Below, piece by piece: positions 1,298 to 52,340 of a DNA stretch of 64,000 nt (positions are counted from its first letter, which is position 1; each line of letters starts with the position of its first letter). Under the pieces are notes generated by a model. That model did no database searches. It worked only from the letters and a program-made list of their open reading frames with translations, and was not told the DNA's origin. The stretch spans positions 124,001 through 188,000 of the IMG/VR virus record IMGVR_UViG_3300022698_000267. One strand, given 5' to 3'. The position numbers were made by a program, and so were the translations under genes.

Positions 1298-2293
1298 TTG
1301 ATGGGAAAGAGTAGGTTAAAACCCAAGGTTAAGAAAGAAATTGCAGTTGTTCCACATTCTCGTGTGGATCCTAAGAAGGGAGTTGAAGAAGTTGAAGGAC
1401 ATCAACGTAGTATGGATGTTAATGCTGCTGTTTCTGATGTACATAAATCGAAGGAAAATGCAGCAAATCCTGATAGACAAAGACGAGAGTTTGTGGATGA
1501 TATGAATCAGAAGTTTTCTGAGATGAATAGTAGGGAAGAAACACATGATGACTTTAGAAAAAAGACTGGACAAAGAGAACAAGCAAAGCGTCTTACCAGT
1601 GAAGAAATAGGAACTATTGATAAGTACACAGAGGAAGTTGGATTCAATGAAAAGTTGCGAAAGTCTATCAAGGATGGACATACCAATGATCCAGACGTAA
1701 AGCTTCTGGATTCTGTGGTTTCTAAAGCAGAACCACTAGCAAATGATACGTTAGTAGTTAGAGGATCCAGAAGAGATTTTCATAAAACCATTGGTAGAGA
1801 GTTGAAAGTTGGTGAAGTCATCACAGACCATGGATTTATGTCTACCACTACACAACCGGATGTAGCTTCTAATTTCATGTGGAAGCAGAATAAAGATACC
1901 GGAAAGATCAAGATGGGAACCTTCTATCAAATAAGTTTGCCGAAAGGAACGAAAGCATTTCCTATAAATGCTAAGGAGCATGAATATCTTCTTTCCAGAA
2001 ACATGAACTTTGAAGTACTAAATAATCAAGTAGTTGATATGAACAAAGATTCCCAGAAGTTACCAAGGATACTAAAACAGTATGGAGAGCAAGGATTTAA
2101 TCCCCTCACTTGGGGAGTTGGGAGTGATGCCGATACTGGTGGTGGTTCTGCTGGCGGCTCGACCGGTTTGGAATCAGAAAAGTTACGACTGATTCATTTA
2201 CGAGCTTTGCCAAATGAAAACCAGAGAGGAAAAGTTAGTGACAAACCTTTACAACCTAAGAAGACTGTTATTCGGAGAAAGAAAAGGAAATAA
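1298..2293 (+). CDS. ADP-ribosyltransferase (VIP2/exoenzyme-like R-S-E fold) with basic low-complexity N-terminus
   Basis: LVVRG ... DHGFMSTT ... ISLPKGT ... EHEYLL match the R, STT and ExE motifs. Confidence 0.8.
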   Translation: MMGKSRLKPKVKKEIAVVPHSRVDPKKGVEEVEGHQRSMDVNAAVSDVHKSKENAANPDRQRREFVDDMNQKFSEMNSREETHDDFRKKTGQREQAKRLTSEEIGTIDKYTEEVGFNEKLRKSIKDGHTNDPDVKLLDSVVSKAEPLANDTLVVRGSRRDFHKTIGRELKVGEVITDHGFMSTTTQPDVASNFMWKQNKDTGKIKMGTFYQISLPKGTKAFPINAKEHEYLLSRNMNFEVLNNQVVDMNKDSQKLPRILKQYGEQGFNPLTWGVGSDADTGGGSAGGSTGLESEKLRLIHLRALPNENQRGKVSDKPLQPKKTVIRRKKRK

Positions 2294-2515: not shown

Positions 2516-2544
2516 TTGACAAAACCTCTAATTTTTGTTATATT
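2516..2544 (+). promoter_or_regulatory. sigma70-type promoter (copy 2)
   Basis: TTGACA-17-TATATT. Confidence 0.8.
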
Positions 2545-2582: not shown

Positions 2583-3074
2583 ATGCAAATTCGAATCAAC
2601 ATTGAAGACGATATGGCAAAAGTGGATGAAAAGGCTATCCTGGAGAAGTTAAATACTTCCTTTAAGCAATATCCAAATAATTACATTTCATCTTTATTTA
2701 CTCAAGAGTTTGTTGATTGGTGTTCCTGGAGGATTAAGAATGATTTCCCTCTCGATGTGATGGAGTACATCAATGCTTATGAGGAAGATAAAGATGCCCG
2801 AGCAGAACGTGATTTGGCCCAGGCTGAAGCAGATTCTAAAGAAGAACTTCTTGAAGTTCGGGATCAAATTATACGAGATAGAGAGGAAGAGATTTTAAAG
2901 CTTCATGAACAAATTGAAATCATGCAATCCAAGATGGATACAATGGTTGATCGAATCGTTTTTGAGGCTATGAGCAGGGAAAGAGACAAACAAGACCAGG
3001 CTTATGCAAGGTTGGAACAAGAGAATAAAGACTTGAAAGCCCATCTTTATGATTTAATGACAAAAAAATCTTGA
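2583..3074 (+). CDS. hypothetical coiled-coil protein
   Basis: 163-aa ORF behind promoter, GGAGG RBS. Confidence 0.7.
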   Translation: MQIRINIEDDMAKVDEKAILEKLNTSFKQYPNNYISSLFTQEFVDWCSWRIKNDFPLDVMEYINAYEEDKDARAERDLAQAEADSKEELLEVRDQIIRDREEEILKLHEQIEIMQSKMDTMVDRIVFEAMSRERDKQDQAYARLEQENKDLKAHLYDLMTKKS

Positions 3075-3222: not shown

Positions 3223-3567
3223 ATGGCAAAGTACGAAATGAAGGAAGATCTTAAAGCATTAGCGTCGAGGATAAGAAATGGGAAATCCGGAAGGAAACCC
3301 AAATTTAGGACTGAAACAAACACTCAGGATTACAACGATTTAGACCGTCTTCGGTATCAATTCAGACATATGCACATCGCACATTGTCTTCTACGTGGCC
3401 GCAAGATGGAACAAATCGAGCGTCCCAGGGAAGACAACCAACCTAATGACGCTACAATTTACGAATACATTAAGCAGTATAGACCAAAAGATTGGAAGAT
3501 TAATTTTAAGCATACTTTCGATGGTTTGGAAAGTTTTATTGTTGAAGAAAAGAAGGAGGCTGCCTAA
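3223..3567 (+). CDS. phage hypothetical protein upstream of the PTH2-like gene
   Basis: AAGGAG RBS; RHMHIAHCLLRGRKMEQIE motif. Confidence 0.75.
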   Translation: MAKYEMKEDLKALASRIRNGKSGRKPKFRTETNTQDYNDLDRLRYQFRHMHIAHCLLRGRKMEQIERPREDNQPNDATIYEYIKQYRPKDWKINFKHTFDGLESFIVEEKKEAA

Positions 3568-3860
3568 TGGAAAAAATGTATGTTCTTATACGAAAGGACT
3601 TGTCTAAAAGTCAGCAGGCCGTCCAAGCTGGACATGCCGTGGCAGAGTACGTTCTACGGGATTAGGGACTTCGTTGGACTAACGGAACGCTTATCTACTT
3701 GGCAGTTAAGAACGAAGATGACCTTAGACATTGGGAAAAGAAGTTAATGGATTGTAATCAATTGTACGTAACATTTCGGGAACCTGATATTGGTTATCAG
3801 AGGACAGCTATTGCAACTGTTGCTGGCGGCGAAATGTTTAAAAACGAGAGATTGCTTTAA
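3567..3860 (+). CDS. peptidyl-tRNA hydrolase type 2 (PTH2)-like protein with in-frame amber at codon 33
   Basis: Manual translation: MEKMYVLIRKDLSKSQQAVQAGHAVAEYVLRD*GLRWTNGTLIYLAVKNEDDLRHWEKKLMDCNQLYVTFREPDIGYQRTAIATVAGGEMFKNERLL; TAG 3663-3665; absent from the ORF track. Confidence 0.75.
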
Positions 3861-3866
3861 ATGGAT

Positions 3867-3944
3867 TGCGTCTGTAGCTGAGAGGTTCAGCGGTGGACTC
3901 TAAATCCACGTCAACGTAGGTTCGAATCCTACCAGACGCACCCA
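3867..3944 (+). tRNA. amber suppressor tRNA, anticodon CTA
   Basis: Acceptor GCGTCTG/CAGACGC, D stem GCTG/CAGC, anticodon stem GTGGA/TCCAC with loop CT-CTA-AA, T arm GTAGG-TTCGAAT-CCTAC. Confidence 0.9.
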
Positions 3945-3964
3945 AAAATAAATTCAAATAATAC

Positions 3965-3993
3965 TTGACAAAACCCCTCAAATATACTATAAT
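3965..3993 (+). promoter_or_regulatory. sigma70-type promoter (copy 3)
   Basis: TTGACA-17-TATAAT directly after the tRNA. Confidence 0.85.
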
Positions 3994-4024
3994 GTGTTTA
4001 ATTAAAAATTGAGGGAGATACATT

Positions 4025-7532: not shown

Positions 7533-7707
7533 AATTAAATATTGACTGCACCCGTGGACCATAGTGGGTATTGTGGGCTCGCGACCTATCAAGATACCAC
7601 AAAGTCGCCCGACTTGGGGAGATGCGGAACTGGAACTTTTGGATTCACACCGGTCAATGAGCCATTAGGAAAGGATAAGTGCCGTCGGGTGCAGTGAATA
7701 TTTAATT
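7533..7707 (+). ncRNA. candidate structured ncRNA (175 nt)
   Basis: ATTAAATATTGACTGCACCCG / CGGGTGCAGTGAATATTTAAT closing stem with 1 mismatch, between two tRNAs, no ORF. Confidence 0.6.
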
Positions 7708-7708
7708 T

Positions 7709-7785
7709 GCGCTCATAGCTCAGCTGGACAGAGCAGGAGCCTTCTAAGCTTCAGGTCGTAGGTTCGAATCCTACTGGGCGTACCA
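7709..7785 (+). tRNA. tRNA-Arg(TCT)
   Basis: Cloverleaf, loop CT-TCT-AA, CCA. Confidence 0.95.
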
Positions 7786-7802
7786 TAAATTTCATAAAGT
7801 AC

Positions 7803-7831
7803 TTGACTTTTTGTTCCATATCCTATATAAT
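7803..7831 (+). promoter_or_regulatory. sigma70-type promoter (copy 4)
   Basis: TTGACT-17-TATAAT. Confidence 0.85.
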
Positions 7832-7856
7832 AAATTAAAAAATTAAGGAGGGAGCA

Positions 7857-8057
7857 ATGAGTGAGTACACTGTTCAAAGTGCAGATCCAAAGGAATTGAT
7901 TGCTGTGATTTCAAATCATGAATGGAAATGGGCAGATGTTAAAGCTACGAGAAAAGAAAATCTAGTGACTGTTCAGGAATTAGCAGGTAATTGTCTCGAT
8001 GAACTTGATGCAATTTTGGATTCTGTTCCCGGCAGTTACTACATACTATCTCATTAG
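7857..8057 (+). CDS. small hypothetical protein
   Basis: AAGGAGG RBS behind promoter. Confidence 0.7.
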   Translation: MSEYTVQSADPKELIAVISNHEWKWADVKATRKENLVTVQELAGNCLDELDAILDSVPGSYYILSH

Positions 8058-8498: not shown

Positions 8499-8520
8499 TT
8501 AAAATAATTTCAAATAATAC

Positions 8521-8549
8521 TTGACATTTTTATTCATTTCCTATATAAT
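8521..8549 (+). promoter_or_regulatory. sigma70-type promoter (copy 5)
   Basis: TTGACA-17-TATAAT, then TTTAAGTGGTTGGGGAAA leader. Confidence 0.85.
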
Positions 8550-8586
8550 AGATTTAAGTGGTTGGGGAAATTATAAAGGAGATGTT

Positions 8587-12876: not shown

Positions 12877-12926
12877 ACGAATAAGACGTTGGGGAAATGG
12901 TTAAAATTTAAATGGGAGGTAGCAAA

Positions 12927-13202
12927 ATGGTAGAGAAAATTAAAAAGTATTTTGAGTTGAAGGACCAGATGAAAGCTTTGGATACGGAGCTGAAGGGGAT
13001 TCGGGATGATATTTTCACTGCGTTCGGCGGAGCCAAAGTTGAAATCGAGGTTGATGGTACCAAGGTTCGGTGTCAAACCAAAACACGTTCCACCAAGCGT
13101 TGCAGTTGGGACGCCCTCAAGGAGGCCAACGAAGATCTTTACAATCGTGTGGTAACCGAATCTGAGTCTTCCTACTACGAGCTGAGAAAATTGGCTCGTT
13201 AG
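12927..13202 (+). CDS. small hypothetical protein, paralog of 30818-31093
   Basis: Shared YFELKDQ..KVRCQTK..TESESSYYELRKLAR. Confidence 0.8.
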   Translation: MVEKIKKYFELKDQMKALDTELKGIRDDIFTAFGGAKVEIEVDGTKVRCQTKTRSTKRCSWDALKEANEDLYNRVVTESESSYYELRKLAR

Positions 13203-13215
13203 TTACCCACCCCAC

Positions 13216-13235
13216 TGGGGGGCTTCGGCCCCCCA
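13216..13235 (+). terminator. GC hairpin with C(UUCG)G tetraloop
   Basis: TGGGGGGC-TTCG-GCCCCCCA; similar hairpins near 31814 and 32544. Confidence 0.6.
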
Positions 13236-13813
13236 CCCATTCTTTCAGCTTCCTATCCAATCTGCAAACAATCGTTGCAAACTGCTTAACTATATGAACA
13301 AAGGATGAATATTACTAAATACTTTCTAAGGAGGGGAAGTATGAAAGAAATCAACTTACGTTACATGCTTTCTATTCATCCTGGACTTGGAATTTACAGA
13401 TTATGTATTGTATTTGCAGAGGATGAAGAGAACTATTATGGTCATTGGGTCGTTGATGTTGGAGATTTCAAGACTAAGTTTCCGAAGAAGGGGACCAGAG
13501 CATTGACTGAAGAAGAGGTAGAGAATTACAACAGTTTTCGTTTTAGAAGAACGAAAGGTATTGTATTCGAAATTAAGATGAATTACGATGGTACTCCGAA
13601 AGGACTGAAGAAAAAATTTGAGTAATTTATGGAAAAGGTAAGAGATCAATTAGAGAAAGCATTCGAATATCTTACAGAGTGTGAGAAACAACCAACCTTC
13701 TTTTGCTTGGAACAAATGGAGAAGTACATTCGAAGATCCCTTACTTTTGTTGAGGAAGAAAGAACAAGAATAAATATGAAAATGCGTTTATTGAAAAAAA
13801 ATTCAAAAATTAC

Positions 13814-15522: not shown

Positions 15523-15541
15523 AAATAATTTCAAATAATAC

Positions 15542-15570
15542 TTGACATTTTCATTCATTTCCTATATAAT
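15542..15570 (+). promoter_or_regulatory. sigma70-type promoter (copy 12)
   Basis: TTGACA-17-TATAAT; nearly identical to copy 5. Confidence 0.85.
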
Positions 15571-15761
15571 AGATTTAAGTGGTTGGGGGAAATATTAATA
15601 CGGAGGAAAGATAATGAAACCTACTAAATTCCTTTGTTCCAATGCCAAAGATTTTTGTTGTGGAAAAGCTAACAAGTTGACCATGAAAGGTGTCATTCGG
15701 GCCATTTGTAAGAAAGAAGCCAAGATCGAAATCAAAGAACAGTTGGTGGAAGATAAGTAAT

Positions 15762-30765: not shown

Positions 30766-30817
30766 ACGTTTAAGTGGTTGGGGAAATGGTTAAAATTTTA
30801 AAAGGGGGGTAGTTAAA

Positions 30818-31093
30818 ATGATCGAGAAAATCCAGAGATATTTCGAGTTGAAGGACCAAATCAAAGTTTTGGACGATGAGTTGAAAGCCATTCGAAGTGA
30901 AGTTTCCACCCTATTTGGTGGGGCTAAAGTTGAAATCGAAGTCGACGGTTCCAAGGTCCGTTGCCAAACCAAAAAACGTTCCACCAAAAGTTGTGATTGG
31001 TCCACGTTTAAGGAAGTCAATGAGCATCTTTACAATCAGATAGTCACCGAATCTGAGTCTTCCTACTATGAGCTGAGAAAATTGGCTCGCTAA
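30818..31093 (+). CDS. paralog of 12927-13202
   Basis: High identity, same stop position (TAA here, TAG there). Confidence 0.8.
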   Translation: MIEKIQRYFELKDQIKVLDDELKAIRSEVSTLFGGAKVEIEVDGSKVRCQTKKRSTKSCDWSTFKEVNEHLYNQIVTESESSYYELRKLAR

Positions 31094-34135: not shown

Positions 34136-37100
34136 GTGATGTCACTTGATGTTAATATTCGTCTTCAGGATAAGCTTGAGAGATCTACCATTTTTAATCA
34201 CAGTCTTAGAGCTTTTCTATTATCACTCCTAATTGTGCTAGGGTTGTACAATCTGAATCTATTTCATCTAACGGGATCACTTATTCCTGTAATAATATCA
34301 ATGTCTTTGTTTCTACTGACTTGGAACACTCGTAATTTCATCAATAATCCTTACATTACTTTTATGGGGATGTCTTGTTTTTTCATAGGTTTGTTTTCAC
34401 TTGGTCATATTGTATTCTATCATGGTGCAAATCTTATAGTACCTATCGACGCTACCAGGTTGGTACGAGTAACAGGATTATTTGCAGATATAATACAAGG
34501 ATTTTCTTTTTTACTAGCACCATTATTCTTTGTTGCTAGAGTGAAATTTAGAATTCTATTTATTATAATTTCTGTTTTTCTACTATCAATGTTGTACTTT
34601 TCTATTTCGATTGATCCAGTATTCAAGTATTACATTGTTTTTAATTTTACCAGTATACAGATATTTATGGTACAGGCAGTACTATTAATTTGTGCTTTAT
34701 TCTTGACATTTAGAATAAGAGAGGCATTTGATAAAAAAACCTTCTACTATCTTCTAGCTTCCATGGTATGTTGTTTAATTTCTGGAATCTCCTATGTGTT
34801 AAATGACCCATTTACAACATATCATGCTATAATTACAATCGTCTTTAATATTCTGACTCTTTTATTTTTATATGACGCTATTATCACTACTGTTTTACTA
34901 AATCCTTATTCCAGTTTAGCTCAGAGTCTAATTACAAGTAAGAAATTGATAAATAATTTAGATTCTATGTATACTAATCTATTTGAAAATATAAATGCTG
35001 GTGTAGCTATATTTAGACCAGAACATGGTAATTTCACTTTGATTTCTATTAATAGAACGGCTTTGGAACTAGATGATCTTGATATTAGGGAGGTATTGGG
35101 TCGTAAAGTAACGGAAATTTGGCCTTCTGTAAAAGAATATGGTATATACGAAGCATTTGAGCACGTTCGAGATACTGGAGATTCTGTGGAATGGCCCACT
35201 TCTTTATATGAGGATGAGAGAATAAGGGCATGGAGAGAAAGTTTTATATATCAACTAGAATCTGGTTTACTAGTGTCGGTATATACAGATAGAACAGATG
35301 AGAAAGAACAGGAAGAGAAATTATTAGAAAGTGAGAGAAGATATAGAACAGTAGCCGAATTTACATACGATTTGGAATATTGGGTTGCTCCTGATGGTTC
35401 ATTTCTTTATATATCTCCGGCATGTGAGAGAATAACGGGGTATACGGTCGAAGAGTTCATGAATGATCCTGAATTAATGGATTCTATAATTTATCCGGAG
35501 GATAGGTTTAAATCTTGTTCTATGAACTCTAAAGATGATGGAACTCTTAATGTAAATTCCACAGAGTTTCGAATAAAGACTAAAAATCATCTGACTAAAT
35601 GGATAGGACATATTTGCATGAACATCTACGATGAAGATGGCACCTATCTGGGAATTCGAGGTAGTTCCAGAGATATTACAGGTAAAAAGGAAGCTGAATT
35701 GGAGGTACTAAGAAGTAAAGCTCTTTTTGAAACCCTTTTTGATGCTCTTTCCATACCTATCTTTCGTAAAGATTTGGAAGGTCATTACGTAATGTTCAAT
35801 AAGGCTTTTTGTAATTTCTTCGAAAGAGATAAGGAGGAATTACAAGGTATTTCAGTCTATGATTTACATACTAAAGAAGTTGCTGATATTTGTATGAATA
35901 GAGATAAAGCTTTGCTGCTATCTGGAGATTCTATACAATCATATACTATTGGAGTGAGGACTAAAAACGGTCTTAGGCAGGTCATTATTAGAAAGTCACT
36001 TTTGAAGGATCATGATGATGTTATAATTGGCTTTGTAGGAGGTGTTTTCGATATTACTAAATTAAATCAATTACAGAATCAATTAATGTCTGAGAAATTA
36101 CTTCATGAAGAAGCACAGAGAGTGGCTAAATTGGGTCATTGGGAATTTGTTAATGGTGATAAGTTTCCTAATTGGTCTGATCAGGTTTTCGAAATATTTG
36201 GGGTATCCAAGACTGCAAAAGGGTTATCTATTGAAGATTGGAAGACCATAATAGACCCTAGAGACTACGATATGGTCATAGATGCTTTTAATACGTGTAG
36301 ATTAGAAAATAGGTCCTTTGAAATAGAATTCAGGGCCATTAAATTTGATACTAAAGAACCAAGATGGTTGTATACTATTGGACGTTGTGTAGAAGATACC
36401 GAACCTAAAAGGGTTTATGGAATCGTTCAGGATATTACAGATTACAAGGAAGCACAGATCTCCTTACATTCTACAGAATTTAAATTCAAAACGTTGATAG
36501 ATAATCTGAATGTTGGGATATACAGTTGTACTGTTGGAGAAAAAGACACAAAGTTTATTGAGGTTAATGATGCTTTAGTTAGACTATTGGGTGCTAAGAA
36601 TAAACAACAATTGTATAAGTTACGACCTAAAGACTTCTGGCTAAATCCTGAAAAACGTGATCTACTTTCGTTTAGACTTTTAAAATATGGTAAAATCCGC
36701 AATATGGAGCTACAATTAAGGACTCTAGATGGTTCTAAAATTACAGGTTTAGTATCTGGTGTTGTTGTCCACGATGATGAATCTAAACCCATTCGCACTG
36801 ATATGATACTGGAAGATATTACACAGAGAAGAAACCTGGAGATACAGTTACAACACGCTGTTAAAATGGAGGCAGTTGGTAGATTTGCTAGTAAATTGTC
36901 GCATGACTTTAATAATCTATTGAGTATTCTACAGGGCTATTCAGAGATACTAAAGAAGGAGTTACCGGAGGGTCAAAATCGTCAGAGAGCAGAGTTAATA
37001 CATAAGTCTTCCATCAATGCTCAGAAGTTAATATCCAGGCTTCTAAAGTTTAGTCGTAAAGAGGTCCTGGAGGTTCATAATGTCAACATACAGAAGTTCT

Positions 37101-38011
37101 TAGATGTGTTCTATACATCAGTCAAAGGATTCCTATCTGAAAATATACAACTAAAATTTATATCAGAAATTGAAAATACTTATTGTAATATGGACATAGC
37201 CCAGATGGAGCAGGTATTAATGAATATAATCGTTAATGCTAAAGACGCTATGCCAGATGGAGGTTCGTTACTTATAGAATGCATTTCTATCAATGTTGAT
37301 GATGAATTCACCTCTTCGAAACCCCATCTTAATTCTGGAGGTTACGTTTGTATTAAAATTGGAGACACTGGTCATGGAATGTCTGATGAAACAAGATTAA
37401 ATATCTTCGAACCATTCTTTACTACTAAAGCTAAAGGAACGGGATTAGGTTTATCCACAGCCTATGGAATAATAAAACAACATGGTGGTGATATATGGGT
37501 CTACAGTGAATTAGGGAAGGGCACAACCTTCAAGATTTATCTACCCATTGTTTCTAAAGACTCCTATGCACCTAAAGTAGATGAAAAGATTCAAATACTG
37601 GATACGAGTTTACATGGAGATGAGAATTTGATAATTGTAGAAGACGATCGTGCCCTGCTTACAATGTTCACAGATATATTGAGTTCTTCTGGATACTATA
37701 CTATGCCGTTCACTGATGGAGATCAATGTCTTGAAGCTATGGTCTTGACGGACGTTATTCCTGATCTGGTCGTTAGCGATTATGTTATGCCAGGAGGGTA
37801 TAATGGACAGCAATTATGTGAAGAGTTGTTGGAGTTATATCCTGATATTAGAATAATACTAATGTCTGGATATTCAGAGAAGTTAAATGGAAGTACTAGG
37901 GTTTCAGGGAAGATCAAAGCTTATCTGGAGAAACCCTTTTCGAATAGAGAATTGTTACAGCTTGTTAGAACTCTTTTAGATGAAAGAAGGAGGTCAATAG
38001 ATGAGAAGTAA
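34136..38011 (+). CDS. hybrid sensor histidine kinase: membrane (MASE3-like) region, several PAS domains, HisKA, HATPase, REC
   Basis: About 8 TM segments; YISPACERITGY; SHDFNNLL H-box; NIIVNAKDAM, DTGHGM, FFTTK.KGTGLGL; VEDD..SDYVMP..KPF. Confidence 0.92.
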   Translation: MMSLDVNIRLQDKLERSTIFNHSLRAFLLSLLIVLGLYNLNLFHLTGSLIPVIISMSLFLLTWNTRNFINNPYITFMGMSCFFIGLFSLGHIVFYHGANLIVPIDATRLVRVTGLFADIIQGFSFLLAPLFFVARVKFRILFIIISVFLLSMLYFSISIDPVFKYYIVFNFTSIQIFMVQAVLLICALFLTFRIREAFDKKTFYYLLASMVCCLISGISYVLNDPFTTYHAIITIVFNILTLLFLYDAIITTVLLNPYSSLAQSLITSKKLINNLDSMYTNLFENINAGVAIFRPEHGNFTLISINRTALELDDLDIREVLGRKVTEIWPSVKEYGIYEAFEHVRDTGDSVEWPTSLYEDERIRAWRESFIYQLESGLLVSVYTDRTDEKEQEEKLLESERRYRTVAEFTYDLEYWVAPDGSFLYISPACERITGYTVEEFMNDPELMDSIIYPEDRFKSCSMNSKDDGTLNVNSTEFRIKTKNHLTKWIGHICMNIYDEDGTYLGIRGSSRDITGKKEAELEVLRSKALFETLFDALSIPIFRKDLEGHYVMFNKAFCNFFERDKEELQGISVYDLHTKEVADICMNRDKALLLSGDSIQSYTIGVRTKNGLRQVIIRKSLLKDHDDVIIGFVGGVFDITKLNQLQNQLMSEKLLHEEAQRVAKLGHWEFVNGDKFPNWSDQVFEIFGVSKTAKGLSIEDWKTIIDPRDYDMVIDAFNTCRLENRSFEIEFRAIKFDTKEPRWLYTIGRCVEDTEPKRVYGIVQDITDYKEAQISLHSTEFKFKTLIDNLNVGIYSCTVGEKDTKFIEVNDALVRLLGAKNKQQLYKLRPKDFWLNPEKRDLLSFRLLKYGKIRNMELQLRTLDGSKITGLVSGVVVHDDESKPIRTDMILEDITQRRNLEIQLQHAVKMEAVGRFASKLSHDFNNLLSILQGYSEILKKELPEGQNRQRAELIHKSSINAQKLISRLLKFSRKEVLEVHNVNIQKFLDVFYTSVKGFLSENIQLKFISEIENTYCNMDIAQMEQVLMNIIVNAKDAMPDGGSLLIECISINVDDEFTSSKPHLNSGGYVCIKIGDTGHGMSDETRLNIFEPFFTTKAKGTGLGLSTAYGIIKQHGGDIWVYSELGKGTTFKIYLPIVSKDSYAPKVDEKIQILDTSLHGDENLIIVEDDRALLTMFTDILSSSGYYTMPFTDGDQCLEAMVLTDVIPDLVVSDYVMPGGYNGQQLCEELLELYPDIRIILMSGYSEKLNGSTRVSGKIKAYLEKPFSNRELLQLVRTLLDERRRSIDEK

Positions 38012-41715: not shown

Positions 41716-42615
41716 ATGGCTACTAGAAAAAAATTGTCACCAAAGGTTGAAAAGGTTATGAAAAAGACAGATGAATCACCGGATATTGAAAGAAATGTTG
41801 TTTGGGATGGTGATAATTCCCAAGAAATCCCTCAAAATCCAGAATTTACTGTTCAAATAACCTCTGAAGAGTCCAGAAAGGCATTAGTACAGCTTTTGGA
41901 GGCTGATTTTCATATTGGAGACAGGAAACAATGGACATACAATGAATATTCCAGGAAATTTCCTGGAATGCAAGGATTAACAAGTCTGGAAAAGGATGTT
42001 ATACAAGATTACATCGATGAAATAGGTTTCAGAGACATTCTTAACAGTTCGATAAAGACTCCTGGATTTAATGAAGAAGATGTAGCTTCTATGGATTCCG
42101 CTATAAATAAATCGGAAGGTATCTCTACAAGATTGACGGTGTATAAAGGGATACAAGTAGACTTTCATGACATAATTGATAGGAAATTGAGAGTTGGAGA
42201 GACCTTTATGGATTTAGGCTTTGCTTCTGTAGCTTTAAAACCAGATGCAGTGACCAATCTTATGTGGAAAAACAATTCAGAAACAAATATGTTAGAATTT
42301 GGCACCATTTTTAAGATAGATTTGCCAGTAGGTACGAAAGTTCTTGCTATTAACTCCTCTGATTTCGAATTACTTCTTCCTAGAGAAATGGAATTTGAGG
42401 TTCTTGAGAACATGATAATAGACATACGAGAAAAGAGAGATTTGGTACCAAGAAGAATATTCGAATATTTGAAGATGTTGGAAATGAAAATGGGTGGAGT
42501 TGTTCCAGAAGATGCATCAAAAATGCGTTTACTATATCTTCGGGCACTACCAAATGATAATCAATTGACTAAGGACTTTTATTCTAAAAAAATAAGGCCA
42601 CGAGGTCAATTCTAG
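41716..42615 (+). CDS. ADP-ribosyltransferase paralog of 1298 with altered catalytic motifs
   Basis: TVYKG, DLGFASV, IDLPVGT, DFELLLPR. Confidence 0.75.
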   Translation: MATRKKLSPKVEKVMKKTDESPDIERNVVWDGDNSQEIPQNPEFTVQITSEESRKALVQLLEADFHIGDRKQWTYNEYSRKFPGMQGLTSLEKDVIQDYIDEIGFRDILNSSIKTPGFNEEDVASMDSAINKSEGISTRLTVYKGIQVDFHDIIDRKLRVGETFMDLGFASVALKPDAVTNLMWKNNSETNMLEFGTIFKIDLPVGTKVLAINSSDFELLLPREMEFEVLENMIIDIREKRDLVPRRIFEYLKMLEMKMGGVVPEDASKMRLLYLRALPNDNQLTKDFYSKKIRPRGQF

Positions 42616-46666: not shown

Positions 46667-48538
46667 TTAGTATATTCCTTGATTAATCTGAAGATTATAG
46701 ACTTGACCATTTTTAAGACTGGCTAGTTTCACTTCATCTGAGAAGTACATAGCTTGTATTGATTCTATAGTAATTTCCTGCATTGTGTGAGCTGCCAACT
46801 TTAAGAATCCATTATCATCCACTTTATAAACTAGAAGTCCTGGTATAGATTCTAACACACAGTAAACAAGGTTTTGATAAGCATAGACTTTAATATAGTT
46901 ATTGTTACCAGTACCTCCATCCCAAAGATTTGAATCTACAAATACTGGTCGTTTTGTAATTGAATCTATTTTGAATGAAAATAGGCCTTGTTGTCCTCCT
47001 GCTATAAATAAGAAATGATTGGAAGTTGTCATATCCTTCGATTGAATTAGTCCATATGAGTATCCATTGTGTGCTTGCAATTCATATACTCCATTAGTAC
47101 TTTCAACGTAGAAGGTGTGGATGTAATATCCTCCGTCTGATATTCTATATAGGAAACCTTCTACTGCAACATACTTCTTTGCAGATGGATATGAATATGT
47201 CATTCTATTTGTGTTAAGAAGGCTTATCCCCCCATCTGGATAAGTTAAAAGGTGATGTATAAACGCATCTGAAGATTCTATAAAAAATCTCGAACTATAA
47301 TTTGCAATGGCAGAACTTGGCTTGCTACCAATGTCATATAAATCTAATGGTTCTAAGGTTCCATTGTTCGTTTGAAAAGTTAACAAACCTCCCCCATTAA
47401 ACAAAGTCGTTGTCGTTTCGTAACCATGCCATAGTACAAAAACCATAGTATTTACTGTTAAAACATCTAGCATTTTAACATTTCCATATGACCTTTTAGC
47501 TTTAGGATGCTCTTGAATAAAATTTTTAATTTGTGTATTGTCTATTGTTGTAAGAGTGTTGTTAGTGTCTATTCTATGATAGATTAAATCTGCATCTCCT
47601 CCAGATATAGAAGAAGCTGCTAAAACATTTCTCCCATTACATTTGAATGTTTCTAATGTTTCAGTTGTCTCATCTATTAGCAATGTTCCATCGACTAGTT
47701 CTGCTGCTAATGTTCCATAGGGTGCTTCTAGACTAGCGCTTGAGCTTGCAGAACTACTTGATGTAGAAGAACTTGAACTACTTTTAGAAGAACTTGAACT
47801 ACTTTTAGAAGAACTTGAACTACTTTTAGAAGAAGCAGAACTGCTTGAACTGCTTGATTTTGAAGAAGAACTACTCGAGCTTGAAGAAGAACTACTTGAC
47901 GGTACTATTATTTCTATTGGTACACATAATCCTACAAGTTCAGCATCTGACATTTCTAGTGGATTCCAAGGTCTCCCTGCAATTTTATCGTATGAACTGT
48001 CAGTTTCACAAACTTCTTTATACTCTAATTCTGCACCAGCAGTGCCCTTCTTCCACAGTCCTCCAAGCTTTCCAAGAAGATTAAGAGTAGTGAGAACCAA
48101 TTGACAATTAAGTCCAGCCAGTGGAATGGGACAGTCTGCTTCTAAATCTGCTAAAACCCATGAATAAGGACAGGCTCCACCTTGCAATTTTGGACAAACT
48201 AGAGGATCATACTTATACACGGCATCCCCGTATATTATAGTTTCCAATCTTTGACATAAGGATACAAATCCTGCATAAGGACATACGTGTTCTTTTCCAG
48301 GTAGTAAATCAATATTATAATCTTTTCTATTGTTTTGAACTGGACATTGTCCAAAACATGTTGATCTGCATCCTGGACAATGTTCACGACAGAAACCCAT
48401 TTCTCCATATTCACCAAAACCCATACCAATGTTCCCATCGAAATCTACCATGGATCCACCAATGGGTCTAAAACTACCTTTTTTTGTCAAAGACCATATA
48501 GGATAATTATCTTTGTGACTCCAGAACGAAAAAGGCAT
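46667..48538 (-). CDS. hypothetical: Cys-rich N-terminus, poly-Ser linker, beta-rich C-terminus (possible virion or surface protein)
   Basis: About 15 Cys in the first 200 aa; about 55-aa Ser tract. Confidence 0.6.
   Translation of the reverse strand: MPFSFWSHKDNYPIWSLTKKGSFRPIGGSMVDFDGNIGMGFGEYGEMGFCREHCPGCRSTCFGQCPVQNNRKDYNIDLLPGKEHVCPYAGFVSLCQRLETIIYGDAVYKYDPLVCPKLQGGACPYSWVLADLEADCPIPLAGLNCQLVLTTLNLLGKLGGLWKKGTAGAELEYKEVCETDSSYDKIAGRPWNPLEMSDAELVGLCVPIEIIVPSSSSSSSSSSSSSKSSSSSSSASSKSSSSSSKSSSSSSKSSSSSSTSSSSASSSASLEAPYGTLAAELVDGTLLIDETTETLETFKCNGRNVLAASSISGGDADLIYHRIDTNNTLTTIDNTQIKNFIQEHPKAKRSYGNVKMLDVLTVNTMVFVLWHGYETTTTLFNGGGLLTFQTNNGTLEPLDLYDIGSKPSSAIANYSSRFFIESSDAFIHHLLTYPDGGISLLNTNRMTYSYPSAKKYVAVEGFLYRISDGGYYIHTFYVESTNGVYELQAHNGYSYGLIQSKDMTTSNHFLFIAGGQQGLFSFKIDSITKRPVFVDSNLWDGGTGNNNYIKVYAYQNLVYCVLESIPGLLVYKVDDNGFLKLAAHTMQEITIESIQAMYFSDEVKLASLKNGQVYNLQINQGIY
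47765..47827. repeat. 3 x 21-bp tandem repeat in the poly-Ser linker
   Basis: AGAAGAACTTGAACTACTTTT x3. Confidence 0.9.
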
Positions 48539-52229: not shown

Positions 52230-52340
52230 TGTGGGTATAGCTTAAAGGTAAAGCGCCTGATCTAGTGAAAGAATGTAATGGTTGGTCACCTTGCCCTTTC
52301 TCGGTCAGGAGAAAATGTTCGAATCATTTGCCCACAACCA
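52230..52340 (+). ncRNA. tRNA-like RNA with a 44-nt extension in place of the anticodon loop
   Basis: TGTGGGT/GCCCACA + A + CCA, D arm GCTT/AAGC, CCTGA/TCAGG stem, T arm AAATG-TTCGAAT-CATTT. Confidence 0.75.

What the first reader, a model, noticed from the sequence alone, without database searches (positions are those of the whole stretch)
3567..3944. PTH2-like gene split by an in-frame amber, with its own amber suppressor tRNA directly behind it
Seen: the ORF from 3567 reads MEKMYVLIRKDL..AVQAGHA..D-TAG(3663)-GLRWTNG..FREPDIG..RTAIA..LL-TAA. A complete tRNA with anticodon CUA starts about 7 nt after the stop. Known: the xQAxHA and EPD/TAI motifs of PTH2-like peptidyl-tRNA hydrolases lie on opposite sides of the TAG, so only readthrough gives a full enzyme. 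TAG is an ordinary stop elsewhere in this window (gyrA; 13200, where the paralog has TAA). Inference: this is a local, programmed recoding switch that gates a tRNA-recycling enzyme on suppressor tRNA versus RF1 competition, not genome-wide code 15.
Basis: partly seen in the sequence, partly recalled or inferred. Interest (0 to 1): 0.95.

Follow-up and report, generated by a model that had tools for sequence, protein, structure and literature searches.

The report
Amber-gated hydrolase gene plus suppressor tRNA
A giant phage carries a small tRNA-hydrolase-like gene that can be translated in full only if the stop-codon-reading tRNA encoded just behind it works, and the same gene-plus-tRNA pair, usually with the stop codon at the third or fourth codon, is widespread in phages that otherwise appear to use the normal genetic code.

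Summary
ATG 3567, in-frame TAG 3663-3665, TAA 3858-3860, and a canonical tRNA(CUA) at 3868-3940 lie in one early operon. The TAG is identical in three separate metagenome assemblies.

Both halves of the ORF match one PTH2-fold domain (PHROG 1866). All invariant residues are intact on both sides of the TAG.

In about 187 kb (68%) of the 273.5-kb phage contig, no other gene is split. TAG ends 21% of genes there. This region is therefore not code 15.

The main new result is comparative. I sorted 63 sequence clusters of this protein family from IMG/VR and cultured jumbo phages.
- 46 have a CUA/UUA suppressor tRNA within 3 kb, always on the same strand.
- 39 carry a conserved leader, ATG, 1-6 codons, then TAG, with no other start codon before the domain. 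The base after TAG is always a purine.

The window's own subfamily has lost that leader. The window has its TAG at codon 33 instead.

For this particular TAG it is plausible but unproven, because the nearest relatives have a sense codon there. The enzyme's activity and the amino acid inserted at the TAG are unknown.

The parts
2516..2544 (+). Early sigma-70-type promoter (TTGACA-17-TATATT) that heads the operon. It belongs to a family of at least 22 near-identical extended promoters in window 1-33 kb.
2583..3074 (+). First ORF of the operon (163 aa), function unknown.
3223..3567 (+). 'orfX': a small basic protein (114 aa) of a family that lies directly beside the PTH2-like gene in at least 15 clusters. 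It has no Pfam, PHROG or PDB match.
   Evidence: alignment A3
3567..3662 (+). PTH2-like gene, part before the TAG (32 codons: strand 1 and helix 1 with the Q..HA motif). A strong Shine-Dalgarno site lies at 3552-3558.
3663..3665 (+). In-frame amber codon (codon 33), followed by G. It aligns with a variable residue in the loop after helix 1.
3666..3860 (+). PTH2-like gene, part after the TAG (64 codons plus TAA). It holds the invariant F-x-E-P-D...Q-x-T-A residues.
3868..3944 (+). Amber-suppressor tRNA. It has a 7-bp acceptor stem, G18G19, a T-loop, the anticodon loop CU-CUA-AA, a 6-nt variable loop and A73, followed by CCCA. It is the first of 19 ARAGORN tRNAs in the window (Rfam adds a twentieth, tRNA-like, at 52231-52336).
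3965..3993 (+). Next early promoter (12/12 match to the consensus), marking the end of the transcription unit.

Best explanation
The ORF at 3567-3860 encodes a phage protein of the PTH2 fold (PHROG 1866). A full-length product needs the UAG at codon 33 to be decoded by the tRNA(CUA) encoded 7 nt downstream in the same early transcript. Without that tRNA, only a 32-residue fragment is made.

This is the local form of a widespread phage cassette: a PTH2-like gene next to an amber-suppressor tRNA on the same strand. In most members the ORF begins ATG, one or two codons, then TAG. The amount of enzyme is therefore tied to how well the suppressor is expressed, charged and able to beat RF1. This is a feed-forward gate.

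Shown here: the anatomy, the fold, the cassette linkage, the conserved amber codon, and normal use of TAG elsewhere in the genome.

Inferred: the TAG really is read through. The enzyme hydrolyses peptidyl- or N-blocked aminoacyl-tRNA that builds up when stop codons are suppressed (drop-off, ribosomes running to mRNA ends), or it recycles the suppressor tRNA itself. It would then be made only when suppression is active.
For: Anatomy and operon.

Same TAG in three assemblies.

Both pieces are collinear with one domain. All 9 invariant and 3 near-invariant family residues are kept on both sides of the TAG.

PTH2 fold: a profile of 47 relatives hits seven PTH2 structures, best 2zv3 at E 1.5e-10. 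An AlphaFold model of the closest intact relative has pLDDT 92.6, and its top 13 Foldseek hits are all PTH2 structures with TM 0.72-0.79.

Cassette linkage:
- 46 of 63 clusters have a CUA/UUA tRNA within 3 kb, and 36 within 1 kb.
- All 46 are on the same strand.
- The suppressor is the nearest tRNA in 42 of 47 loci and the only tRNA in 21.
- A more distant PTH2 subfamily has 48 tRNAs nearby and no suppressor.

Conserved amber leader:
- The first upstream in-frame stop is TAG in 43 of 63 clusters, against 23% for control ORFs (binomial p 5e-14).
- 39 clusters have ATG 2-7 codons before the TAG, and 36 of them have no ATG/GTG/TTG between the TAG and the domain (the other 3 are HD-domain fusions in which later starts exist).
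- The base after TAG is A in 29 and G in 10, never C or T (chance about 1e-8).

Cultured phages agree. ME3, GAP32, Arash and XacN1 have both leader and suppressor. RaK2 has neither within 20 kb.

TAG elsewhere in this genome behaves like TAA.
Against: There are no expression data of any kind.

The nearest subfamily mostly has no TAG although it keeps the tRNA, so gating is not obligatory. The codon-33 TAG is unique to this lineage.

The TAG sits at a variable loop position where a nonsense codon would be harmless once suppressed.

The window's pieces alone are weak matches to Pfam PTH2: 16.4 bits for the first piece and none for the second. NCBIfam's Pth2 equivalog scores 18.7 bits against a cut-off of 126. 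The Pth2 catalytic Asp position holds Glu, and the Lys-rich loop of Pth2 is missing.

The tRNA's amino-acid identity is unknown.

11 clusters with the leader show no suppressor in the stretch fetched, though many of those stretches are short.

Contig positions 0-79 kb and 266-273 kb were not read.
Confidence: 0.55

Rival explanations
1. Tolerated nonsense codon. The PTH2-like/suppressor-tRNA cassette is real. The TAG at codon 33 is a chance mutation in a variable loop. It persists only because the adjacent suppressor reads it well enough. It has no regulatory purpose in this phage.
For: 9 of 11 clusters of the window's own subfamily have no TAG but keep the tRNA close downstream. The TAG column is variable (I/L/E/G/P/R) and lies in the least confident loop of the model. 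The internal TAGs of L026, L007 and L105 are all at different positions. The three assemblies may sample one population.
Against: It is the only split gene among about 200, and it is exactly the gene that carries an amber codon in 39 of 63 relatives. Two of the 11 clusters that lost the leader TAG have regained an internal one. All invariant residues after the TAG are intact.
Confidence: 0.25
2. Same gate, different job. The PTH2-like enzyme acts on the suppressor tRNA itself, deacylating it or cleaving its peptidyl form. Because the enzyme needs that tRNA to be made, this would be negative feedback that caps the level of suppression.
For: The pairing is tight, same-strand and often exclusive with the suppressor rather than with tRNA arrays in general. 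The active site differs from canonical Pth2. GAP32 and RaK2 carry a separate canonical PTH2 as well.
Against: Nothing bears on substrate specificity. Members without any TAG would lack the feedback.
Confidence: 0.15
3. The phage recodes TAG in late genes (code 15-like). The PTH2-like TAG would then be one of many, the others lying in the unread third of the genome.
For: Recoded phages keep early genes in the standard code and express the suppressor early (preprint 10.1101/2021.08.26.457843). No capsid or terminase gene was recognised in the 187 kb read. Lak and LR756501 relatives are or may be recoded.
Against: The 68% of the contig that was read is densely coded in the standard code. It includes a phage lysozyme and intact ORFs of 976, 1026, 1291, 1820 and 3620 aa. 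TAG ends 21% of genes, with the same downstream extension as TAA. The cultured carriers are annotated in the standard code.
Confidence: 0.05
4. Dead gene or artefact: a pseudogene in decay, or a sequencing error.
For: A premature stop in a short accessory gene is the commonest way for such a gene to die.
Against: Three assemblies have identical sequence. 64 codons stay open after the TAG in a 37% G+C genome, with every invariant residue kept. A strong ribosome-binding site and operon position are retained.
Confidence: 0.03

Closest known systems
Stop-codon-recoded phages (genetic code 15: crAss-like, Lak and others) with their own suppressor tRNAs
   Same: A phage-encoded tRNA(CUA), expressed from standard-code early genes, reads in-frame TAG in phage genes.
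   Different: In recoded phages 26-71% of genes carry in-frame stops, concentrated in structural and lysis genes, and TAG is no longer a general terminator. Here one gene in about 200 has a TAG, TAG ends 21% of genes, and the target is an early gene beside the tRNA.
prfB (release factor 2) autoregulatory in-frame UGA
   Same: A translation-factor gene carries an early in-frame stop codon. Its own synthesis therefore reports the balance between termination and recoding at that codon (established knowledge).
   Different: prfB is rescued by a +1 frameshift and senses its own product. Here the rescue is by a dedicated tRNA, and the product is a hydrolase-like protein, not a release factor.
Lambda bar minigenes and Pth
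   Same: The leader of most relatives (ATG, one codon, stop) has the form of a two-codon minigene. Such minigenes are known to shed dipeptidyl-tRNA and become toxic when peptidyl-tRNA hydrolase is limiting (established knowledge). Here the leader is fused in frame to a PTH2-like ORF.
   Different: bar minigenes end in TAA or TGA and are not read through. The window itself has no such leader; its TAG is at codon 33.
Archaeal/eukaryotic Pth2 (PF01981), and the PTH2 genes already noted in jumbo phages (PMC7824862)
   Same: Same fold and collinear core motifs. A suggested role in freeing tRNA from stalled translation products.
   Different: This is a divergent phage-only subfamily (PHROG 1866) far below curated Pth2 thresholds. 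The acidic catalytic position holds Glu-Pro-Asp instead of Asp-Ala-Gly, and the Gly-Lys loop is absent. It is linked to suppressor tRNAs, which the canonical phage PTH2 copies are not.
Pyrrolysine system (tRNA-Pyl(CUA) near UAG-containing methyltransferase genes)
   Same: A dedicated CUA tRNA serves a few UAG-containing genes encoded nearby. ARAGORN labels this tRNA 'Pyl'.
   Different: The label comes from the anticodon only. This tRNA has G18G19, a T-psi-C loop, a 5-bp anticodon stem and a 6-nt variable loop. No pylS/B/C/D genes were seen.
Synthetic suppressor-tRNA feed-forward loops (PMC7969014)
   Same: Amber codons in a gene of interest, plus a co-regulated suppressor tRNA, give an AND gate that removes leaky expression.
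   Different: Those are engineered. This would be a natural counterpart.

Membership tests
PTH2 superfamily (fold level) | Alpha/beta PTH2 fold | tested here: met
   The test used the closest intact relative (L014 ORF, 98 aa), not the window protein read through. AlphaFold gave pLDDT 92.6 and pTM 0.85. The top 13 Foldseek PDB hits are all PTH2 structures (2zv3, 1wn2, 3erj, 1q7s, 1xty, 1rlk) with TM 0.72-0.79.
PTH2 superfamily (fold level) | Significant profile match to solved PTH2 proteins | tested here: met
   The 47-sequence profile scores 2zv3 at E 1.5e-10 and 24bt at 3.1e-10, and five further PTH2 chains match. Pfam PF01981 is hit by 7 of 9 intact relatives, best E 1e-7.
Pth2 enzyme family (PF01981 / NCBIfam NF003314) | Score at or above the curated cut-off | tested here: not met
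   The window's first piece scores 16.4 bits against 23, and the second piece has no hit. The closest intact relative scores 18.7 bits against 126 for the Pth2 equivalog.
Pth2 enzyme family (PF01981 / NCBIfam NF003314) | Active-site residues of archaeal Pth2: Lys of the Gly-Lys loop and Asp of D-A-G (recalled from S. solfataricus mutagenesis, not checked in a paper here) | tested here: inconclusive
   In the alignment to 2zv3 the Asp column holds the invariant Glu of E-P-D, and the Lys-rich loop is absent. The family invariants are R10, H24, F71, E73, P74, D75, Q79, T81 and A82.
Pth2 enzyme family (PF01981 / NCBIfam NF003314) | Peptidyl-tRNA hydrolase activity | not testable with these tools
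   This needs an enzyme assay.
Amber suppressor tRNA | Canonical cloverleaf with anticodon CUA, U33 and a purine at 37 | tested here: met
   Rfam tRNA model, 64.4 bits, full length, loop CU-CUA-AA.
Amber suppressor tRNA | Charged and used at UAG | not testable with these tools
   Amino-acid identity is unresolved. The tRNA has A73 and a Glu-like D-loop. Its best pairwise score to the window's other tRNAs is only 24, against 78 for a self-match.
tRNA-Pyl | Six-bp anticodon stem, 3-nt variable loop, small D-loop without G18G19, no T-psi-C; pyl genes nearby | tested here: not met
   The tRNA has a 5-bp anticodon stem, a 6-nt variable loop, and both GG and TTCGAAT present. No pyl genes appear among the called genes.
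Code-15 (TAG-recoded) phage | Many genes with in-frame TAG, fragmented standard-code gene calls, and TAG not used as a terminator | tested here: not met
   Tested in 187 of 273.5 kb. One split gene was found. Coding fraction in the standard code is 0.85-0.88. 41 of 197 genes end in TAG, with a median extension of 11 codons, the same as for TAA. The remaining 32% is untested.
PTH2-like / suppressor-tRNA cassette (defined here) | PHROG 1866 gene with a CUA/UUA tRNA within 3 kb on the same strand | tested here: met
   In the window the gap is 7 nt. 46 of 63 clusters meet the criterion.
PTH2-like / suppressor-tRNA cassette (defined here) | Leader of ATG, 1-6 codons, TAG, with no other start before the domain | tested here: not met
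   The window starts with a plain ATG. Its TAG is at codon 33. The leader is present in 39 of 63 clusters.

The most novel reading that the evidence does not exclude
The cassette is a natural, portable genetic switch that depends on a suppressor tRNA. A two-codon, bar-like leader ending in UAG is fused to a PTH2-fold enzyme. Together they measure the cell's amber-suppression state (tRNA(CUA) against RF1) and set hydrolase capacity accordingly. This would give the long-sought target of the 'orphan' suppressor tRNAs of standard-code jumbo phages. It may also represent the ambiguous-decoding stage from which full TAG reassignment (code 15) evolved.
Probability: 0.35. Interest if true: 0.92.

Novelty: new variant of a known kind. 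Interest (0 to 1): 0.85.

Why it matters
**Orphan suppressor tRNAs.** Suppressor tRNAs have been reported in jumbo phages that use the standard code, and no target gene could be named. The XacN1 paper says so explicitly (PMC5852040). The present result names a conserved target lying next to the tRNA.

**Annotation.** The amber codon has caused mis-annotation in cultured phages. GAP32_397 and Arash gp84c are annotated as truncated ORFs that lack the first half of the domain.

**Biology.** A single gene whose translation is tied to a dedicated suppressor would be a natural counterpart of engineered amber gates. It is also a plausible first step toward stop-codon reassignment.

**Possible mechanism.** It links termination or suppression to peptidyl-tRNA recycling. 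The same genome also carries a small GGQ (ArfB-like) protein, RtcB and two Thg1 genes, which fits that link.

**Tractability.** The cassette occurs in phages that can be grown (GAP32, ME3, Arash, CBB, Serratia BF, Yersinia fHe-Yen9-04), so the idea can be tested directly.

I found no paper in the searchable library that links PTH2 to suppressor tRNAs or to an amber leader. That is absence of evidence only.

Tried and rejected
- Nucleotide search of the region against cultured phages found only a 78% match of the tRNA to a 'tRNA-Glu' of phage DLP_3, so there is no close relative.
- The search for related loci with the 9-sequence alignment failed because no stretch was conserved enough. A degenerate DNA pattern for F-x-E-P-D-x-x-x-Q-x-T-A replaced it.
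- orfX has no hit in Pfam, PHROGs or PDB.
- No theta or HDV-like ribozyme, or any other Rfam family, lies next to the tRNA.
- I tested whether TAG-terminated genes are followed in frame by the next gene more often than others, which would suggest fusion by readthrough. They are not: 7 of 23 against 17 of 79, p 0.41.
- Reinitiation after a two-codon upstream ORF was rejected as a general reading of the leader. The codon after TAG is ATT in 18 cases, but elsewhere it is GTA, ACN, GGC, AAT or AGC, which are not start codons.
- The suppressor tRNAs beside the gene are too diverse for a single identity call.
- Large ORFs on the contig flanks gave no PHROG match, so late genes could not be recognised by name.
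- The genome walk ran low on look-ups before reaching contig positions 0-79 kb.
- I did not translate the window gene through its stop for any search or fold. Pieces and intact relatives were used instead.

Full report
**1. The observation**

The window is an AT-rich (36.7% G+C) stretch of a giant phage. It carries 19 tRNA genes, gyrA, gyrB, a hybrid histidine kinase and two ADP-ribosyltransferase-like genes. It corresponds to positions 124,001-188,000 of a 273,563-bp contig (IMG/VR UViG 3300022698_000267, equal to JGI Ga0248662_100005).

At the reported place the sequence reads as follows:
- a Shine-Dalgarno site, then ATG at 3567, overlapping the previous ORF's stop as TAATG;
- 32 codons, then TAG at 3663;
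- 64 codons, then TAA at 3858;
- 7 nt later, a tRNA with anticodon CUA.

Rfam's tRNA model scores this tRNA 64.4 bits at 3868-3940, with a regular cloverleaf. The stretch 3567-3944 is identical in contigs assembled from three JGI samples. One of those contigs differs at four other sites in 5.6 kb. The TAG is therefore real, although the samples have neighbouring ids and may hold one population.

**2. What the gene is**

I searched the two pieces separately.
- The first piece matches Pfam PTH2 weakly (E 0.011, below threshold) and PHROG 1866 (E 1e-6).
- Both pieces match PHROG 3668 ('hydrolase') collinearly.
- By tblastn each piece finds the same ORF, in the same frame and at the same spacing, in Xanthomonas, Stenotrophomonas, Cronobacter and Acinetobacter jumbo phages, in Lak phages and in uncultured huge phages.

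A profile of 47 intact relatives hits seven solved PTH2 proteins, the best at E 1.5e-10. An AlphaFold model of the closest intact relative has pLDDT 92.6, and PTH2 structures fill its top 13 Foldseek matches at TM 0.72-0.79.

Membership of the fold superfamily is therefore secure. Membership of the Pth2 enzyme family is not:
- curated cut-offs are missed by a wide margin;
- the catalytic Asp column holds the Glu of an invariant E-P-D;
- the Gly-Lys loop of Pth2 is absent.

All invariant residues of the phage family are present in the window gene on both sides of the TAG. The TAG aligns with a variable residue in the loop after helix 1, which is the least confident part of the model.

**3. The operon**

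An extended sigma-70-type promoter occurs at least 22 times in the first 33 kb of the window. One copy, at 2516-2544, precedes two ORFs, the PTH2-like gene and the tRNA. The next copy, a 12/12 match, follows at 3965-3993. The gene and its tRNA are thus most likely made from one early transcript.

**4. Is the code changed genome-wide?**

Within the window only this gene looks split by a TAG. Other TAG-terminated genes run on for only a few codons before the next stop.

I walked the contig in both directions. Together with the window, the loci fetched cover positions 79,263-262,104, and the 3620-aa ORF that runs off the end of the last locus takes this to about 265,800. That is about 187 kb, or 68% of the contig.
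- Gene calls are dense in the standard code.
- They include a phage lysozyme and intact ORFs of 976, 1026, 1291, 1820 and 3620 aa.
- TAG ends 41 of 197 genes.
- Its downstream extension (median 11 codons) equals that of TAA.
- TAG genes are not followed in frame by the next gene more often than others.

This is not the picture of a code-15 phage. However, capsid and terminase genes were not recognised, and 32% of the contig is unread.

**5. The comparative result**

A degenerate DNA pattern for the C-terminal motif pulled 120 loci from IMG/VR. An HMM built from nine intact domains showed nearly all to be true relatives. They split into a close family (84 loci, counting the window's own contig and the ten loci from cultured and uncultured phage records; 63 clusters at 80% identity) and a distant PTH2 subfamily (43 loci).

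In the close family:
- 46 of 63 clusters hold a tRNA with anticodon CUA (a few UUA) within 3 kb, and 36 within 1 kb;
- all 46 are on the gene's strand;
- the suppressor is the nearest tRNA in 42 of the 47 loci that have any tRNA, and the only tRNA in 21.

The distant subfamily has 48 tRNAs nearby and no suppressor.

**6. The conserved amber leader**

I extended each ORF upstream.
- The first in-frame stop before the domain is TAG in 43 of 63 clusters. Control ORFs in the same loci show 23% (binomial p 5e-14).
- In 39 clusters the arrangement is ATG, one codon (26 cases) or two codons (9 cases; at most six), then TAG, then the domain.
- In 36 of these there is no ATG, GTG or TTG between the TAG and the domain. 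The other three are HD-domain fusions in which later starts exist.
- The base after TAG is A in 29 cases and G in 10, never a pyrimidine (chance about 1e-8). A purine after UAG is the context known to favour amber suppression (established knowledge).
- Shine-Dalgarno-like sites precede the ATG in 16 of 39. Many of the rest are in very AT-rich loci without obvious sites.
- The distant subfamily shows none of this (0 of 43).

Cultured phages fit the pattern:
- ME3 has the leader and a tRNA(CUA) 439 nt upstream.
- GAP32 has the leader and an annotated 'Sup-tRNA' 2.8 kb downstream.
- Salmonella phage Arash has the leader and a tRNA(CUA) 1 kb downstream, annotated there as tRNA-Phe.
- XacN1 has the leader and two CUA tRNAs in its terminal repeats, for which its authors found no target.
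- RaK2 has a plain ATG start and no suppressor within 20 kb.

Annotators have truncated the gene at an internal ATG in GAP32 and Arash.

**7. Where the window stands in the family**

The window's subfamily has lost the leader. In most members a plain ATG directly precedes the domain and the tRNA sits 18-44 nt downstream (members L014, L018, L025, L130, L042, L095, L085, L128, L041, the L019 group and L105).

Two of its 11 clusters carry an internal TAG: the window at codon 33 and L105 at about codon 70. Two leader-bearing relatives (L026, L007) have a second, internal TAG. In L026 it aligns with Gln in close relatives.

This leaves two readings for the window's TAG. It may restore the family's amber dependence at a new site. 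Or it may be a nonsense codon that is harmless because the suppressor is next door. The data cannot separate these.

**8. How it most likely works**

Shown: the gene and tRNA are linked, and the gene usually cannot be translated without reading a UAG.

Inferred: the tRNA reads that UAG, so the enzyme is made in proportion to suppressor activity.

The purpose is open. The reading I favour is that a PTH2-fold esterase clears peptidyl- or N-blocked aminoacyl-tRNA that builds up when stop codons are read through, and is therefore made only when suppression is on. A negative-feedback role on the suppressor itself is a serious alternative.

The same genome also encodes a 112-aa GGQ (RF-1 domain, ArfB-like) protein, RtcB and two Thg1 paralogues. 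That suits a phage invested in tRNA and ribosome rescue.

The leader of most relatives has the form of a two-codon minigene, of the kind known from lambda bar to load cells with dipeptidyl-tRNA when Pth is limiting. This is a suggestive resemblance, not a test.

**9. A third partner**

The ORF just upstream (3223-3567) belongs to a family of small basic proteins found directly beside the PTH2-like gene in at least 15 clusters, 8 upstream and 7 downstream. It has a conserved R-H-x-x-I-A-Y-x-L-L-R-G...Q-I-E motif and no match in Pfam, PHROGs or PDB.

**10. Novelty**

PTH2 genes in jumbo phages are known (PMC7824862). So are phage suppressor tRNAs and TAG recoding. I found no paper that links the two or that describes an amber codon at the start of this gene. 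I rate it a new variant of a known kind: local stop-codon recoding by a dedicated tRNA, in the same broad class as the Pyl and Sec systems and code-15 phages.

**11. Verdict**

Interest 0.85.

Noticed in passing
window 735-32800 (e.g. 2498-2558, 3946-4013, 8502-8569, 15523-15590): At least 22 copies of a long conserved early promoter (TTCAAAWAKTACTTGACA, 17 nt, TATAAT). It is often followed by a conserved AAGWGGTTGGGG leader. None occur in the second half of the window.
   Followed up: partly
window 3223-3567, and alignment A3: A family of small basic proteins of unknown function ('orfX') flanks the PTH2-like gene in at least 15 clusters. It has no match in any library searched.
   Followed up: partly
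window 34136-38011: A phage-encoded 1291-aa hybrid sensor kinase (MASE3, several PAS domains, HisKA, HATPase, receiver domain).
   Followed up: no
window 1298-2293 and 41716-42615: Two proteins with an ADP-ribosyltransferase (exoenzyme-type) domain. An ADP-ribosylglycohydrolase gene lies upstream of the window (L139 2833-3744).
   Followed up: no
window 52231-52336: Rfam finds a twentieth tRNA-like gene (48.4 bits) with a 43-nt stretch where the model expects 6 positions of the anticodon loop. ARAGORN missed it. It may hold an intron or an insertion.
   Followed up: partly
window 12907-13201 and 30798-31092: A pair of paralogous genes 76% identical at DNA level. One ends in TAG (13200) and the other in TAA. 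The TAG copy runs on for 28 more codons.
   Followed up: no
window 3940-3944: The suppressor tRNA is followed by CCCA rather than CCA, whereas the other 18 tRNAs all encode CCA. A CCA end is encoded only if U3867 pairs with A3940 as an eighth acceptor pair. Three related suppressors (L014, L041, L089) also have a 5' U that can pair with the 3'-side base in this way.
   Followed up: partly
L140 10537-10875 (contig about 224.9 kb); L140 5965-7149; L144 10001-11643: The same phage encodes a 112-aa GGQ-motif RF-1-domain protein (ArfB-like), RtcB RNA ligase and two adjacent Thg1-family genes.
   Followed up: partly
L135 12524-17259 (contig about 198.5-203.3 kb): A gene set for 7-deazaguanine synthesis (QueD, QueE, FolE and QueC-like), suggesting modified DNA.
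   Followed up: no
L145 18295 onward; L142 16982-22444: Giant ORFs of 3620 aa (no domain match on record) and 1820 aa (Kelch-type beta-propeller repeats).
   Followed up: no
L147 (GAP32) 13205-13633; L148 (RaK2) 7629-8042: GAP32 and RaK2 each carry a second, canonical PTH2 gene several kb from the divergent copy. These phages therefore hold two PTH2-fold paralogues.
   Followed up: no
L149 (Salmonella phage Arash) 21301-21375: A tRNA annotated as tRNA-Phe in the record has anticodon CTA according to ARAGORN.
   Followed up: partly
L001-L003, L023 (Xanthomonas and Stenotrophomonas jumbo phages): Here the PTH2-like domain is the C-terminal part of a roughly 280-aa protein. Its N-terminal part has HD-phosphohydrolase-like motifs. 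The amber leader sits at the start of the whole fusion.
   Followed up: partly
window 47764-47846: Three tandem 21-nt repeats inside the 623-aa minus-strand ORF (46667-48538).
   Followed up: no
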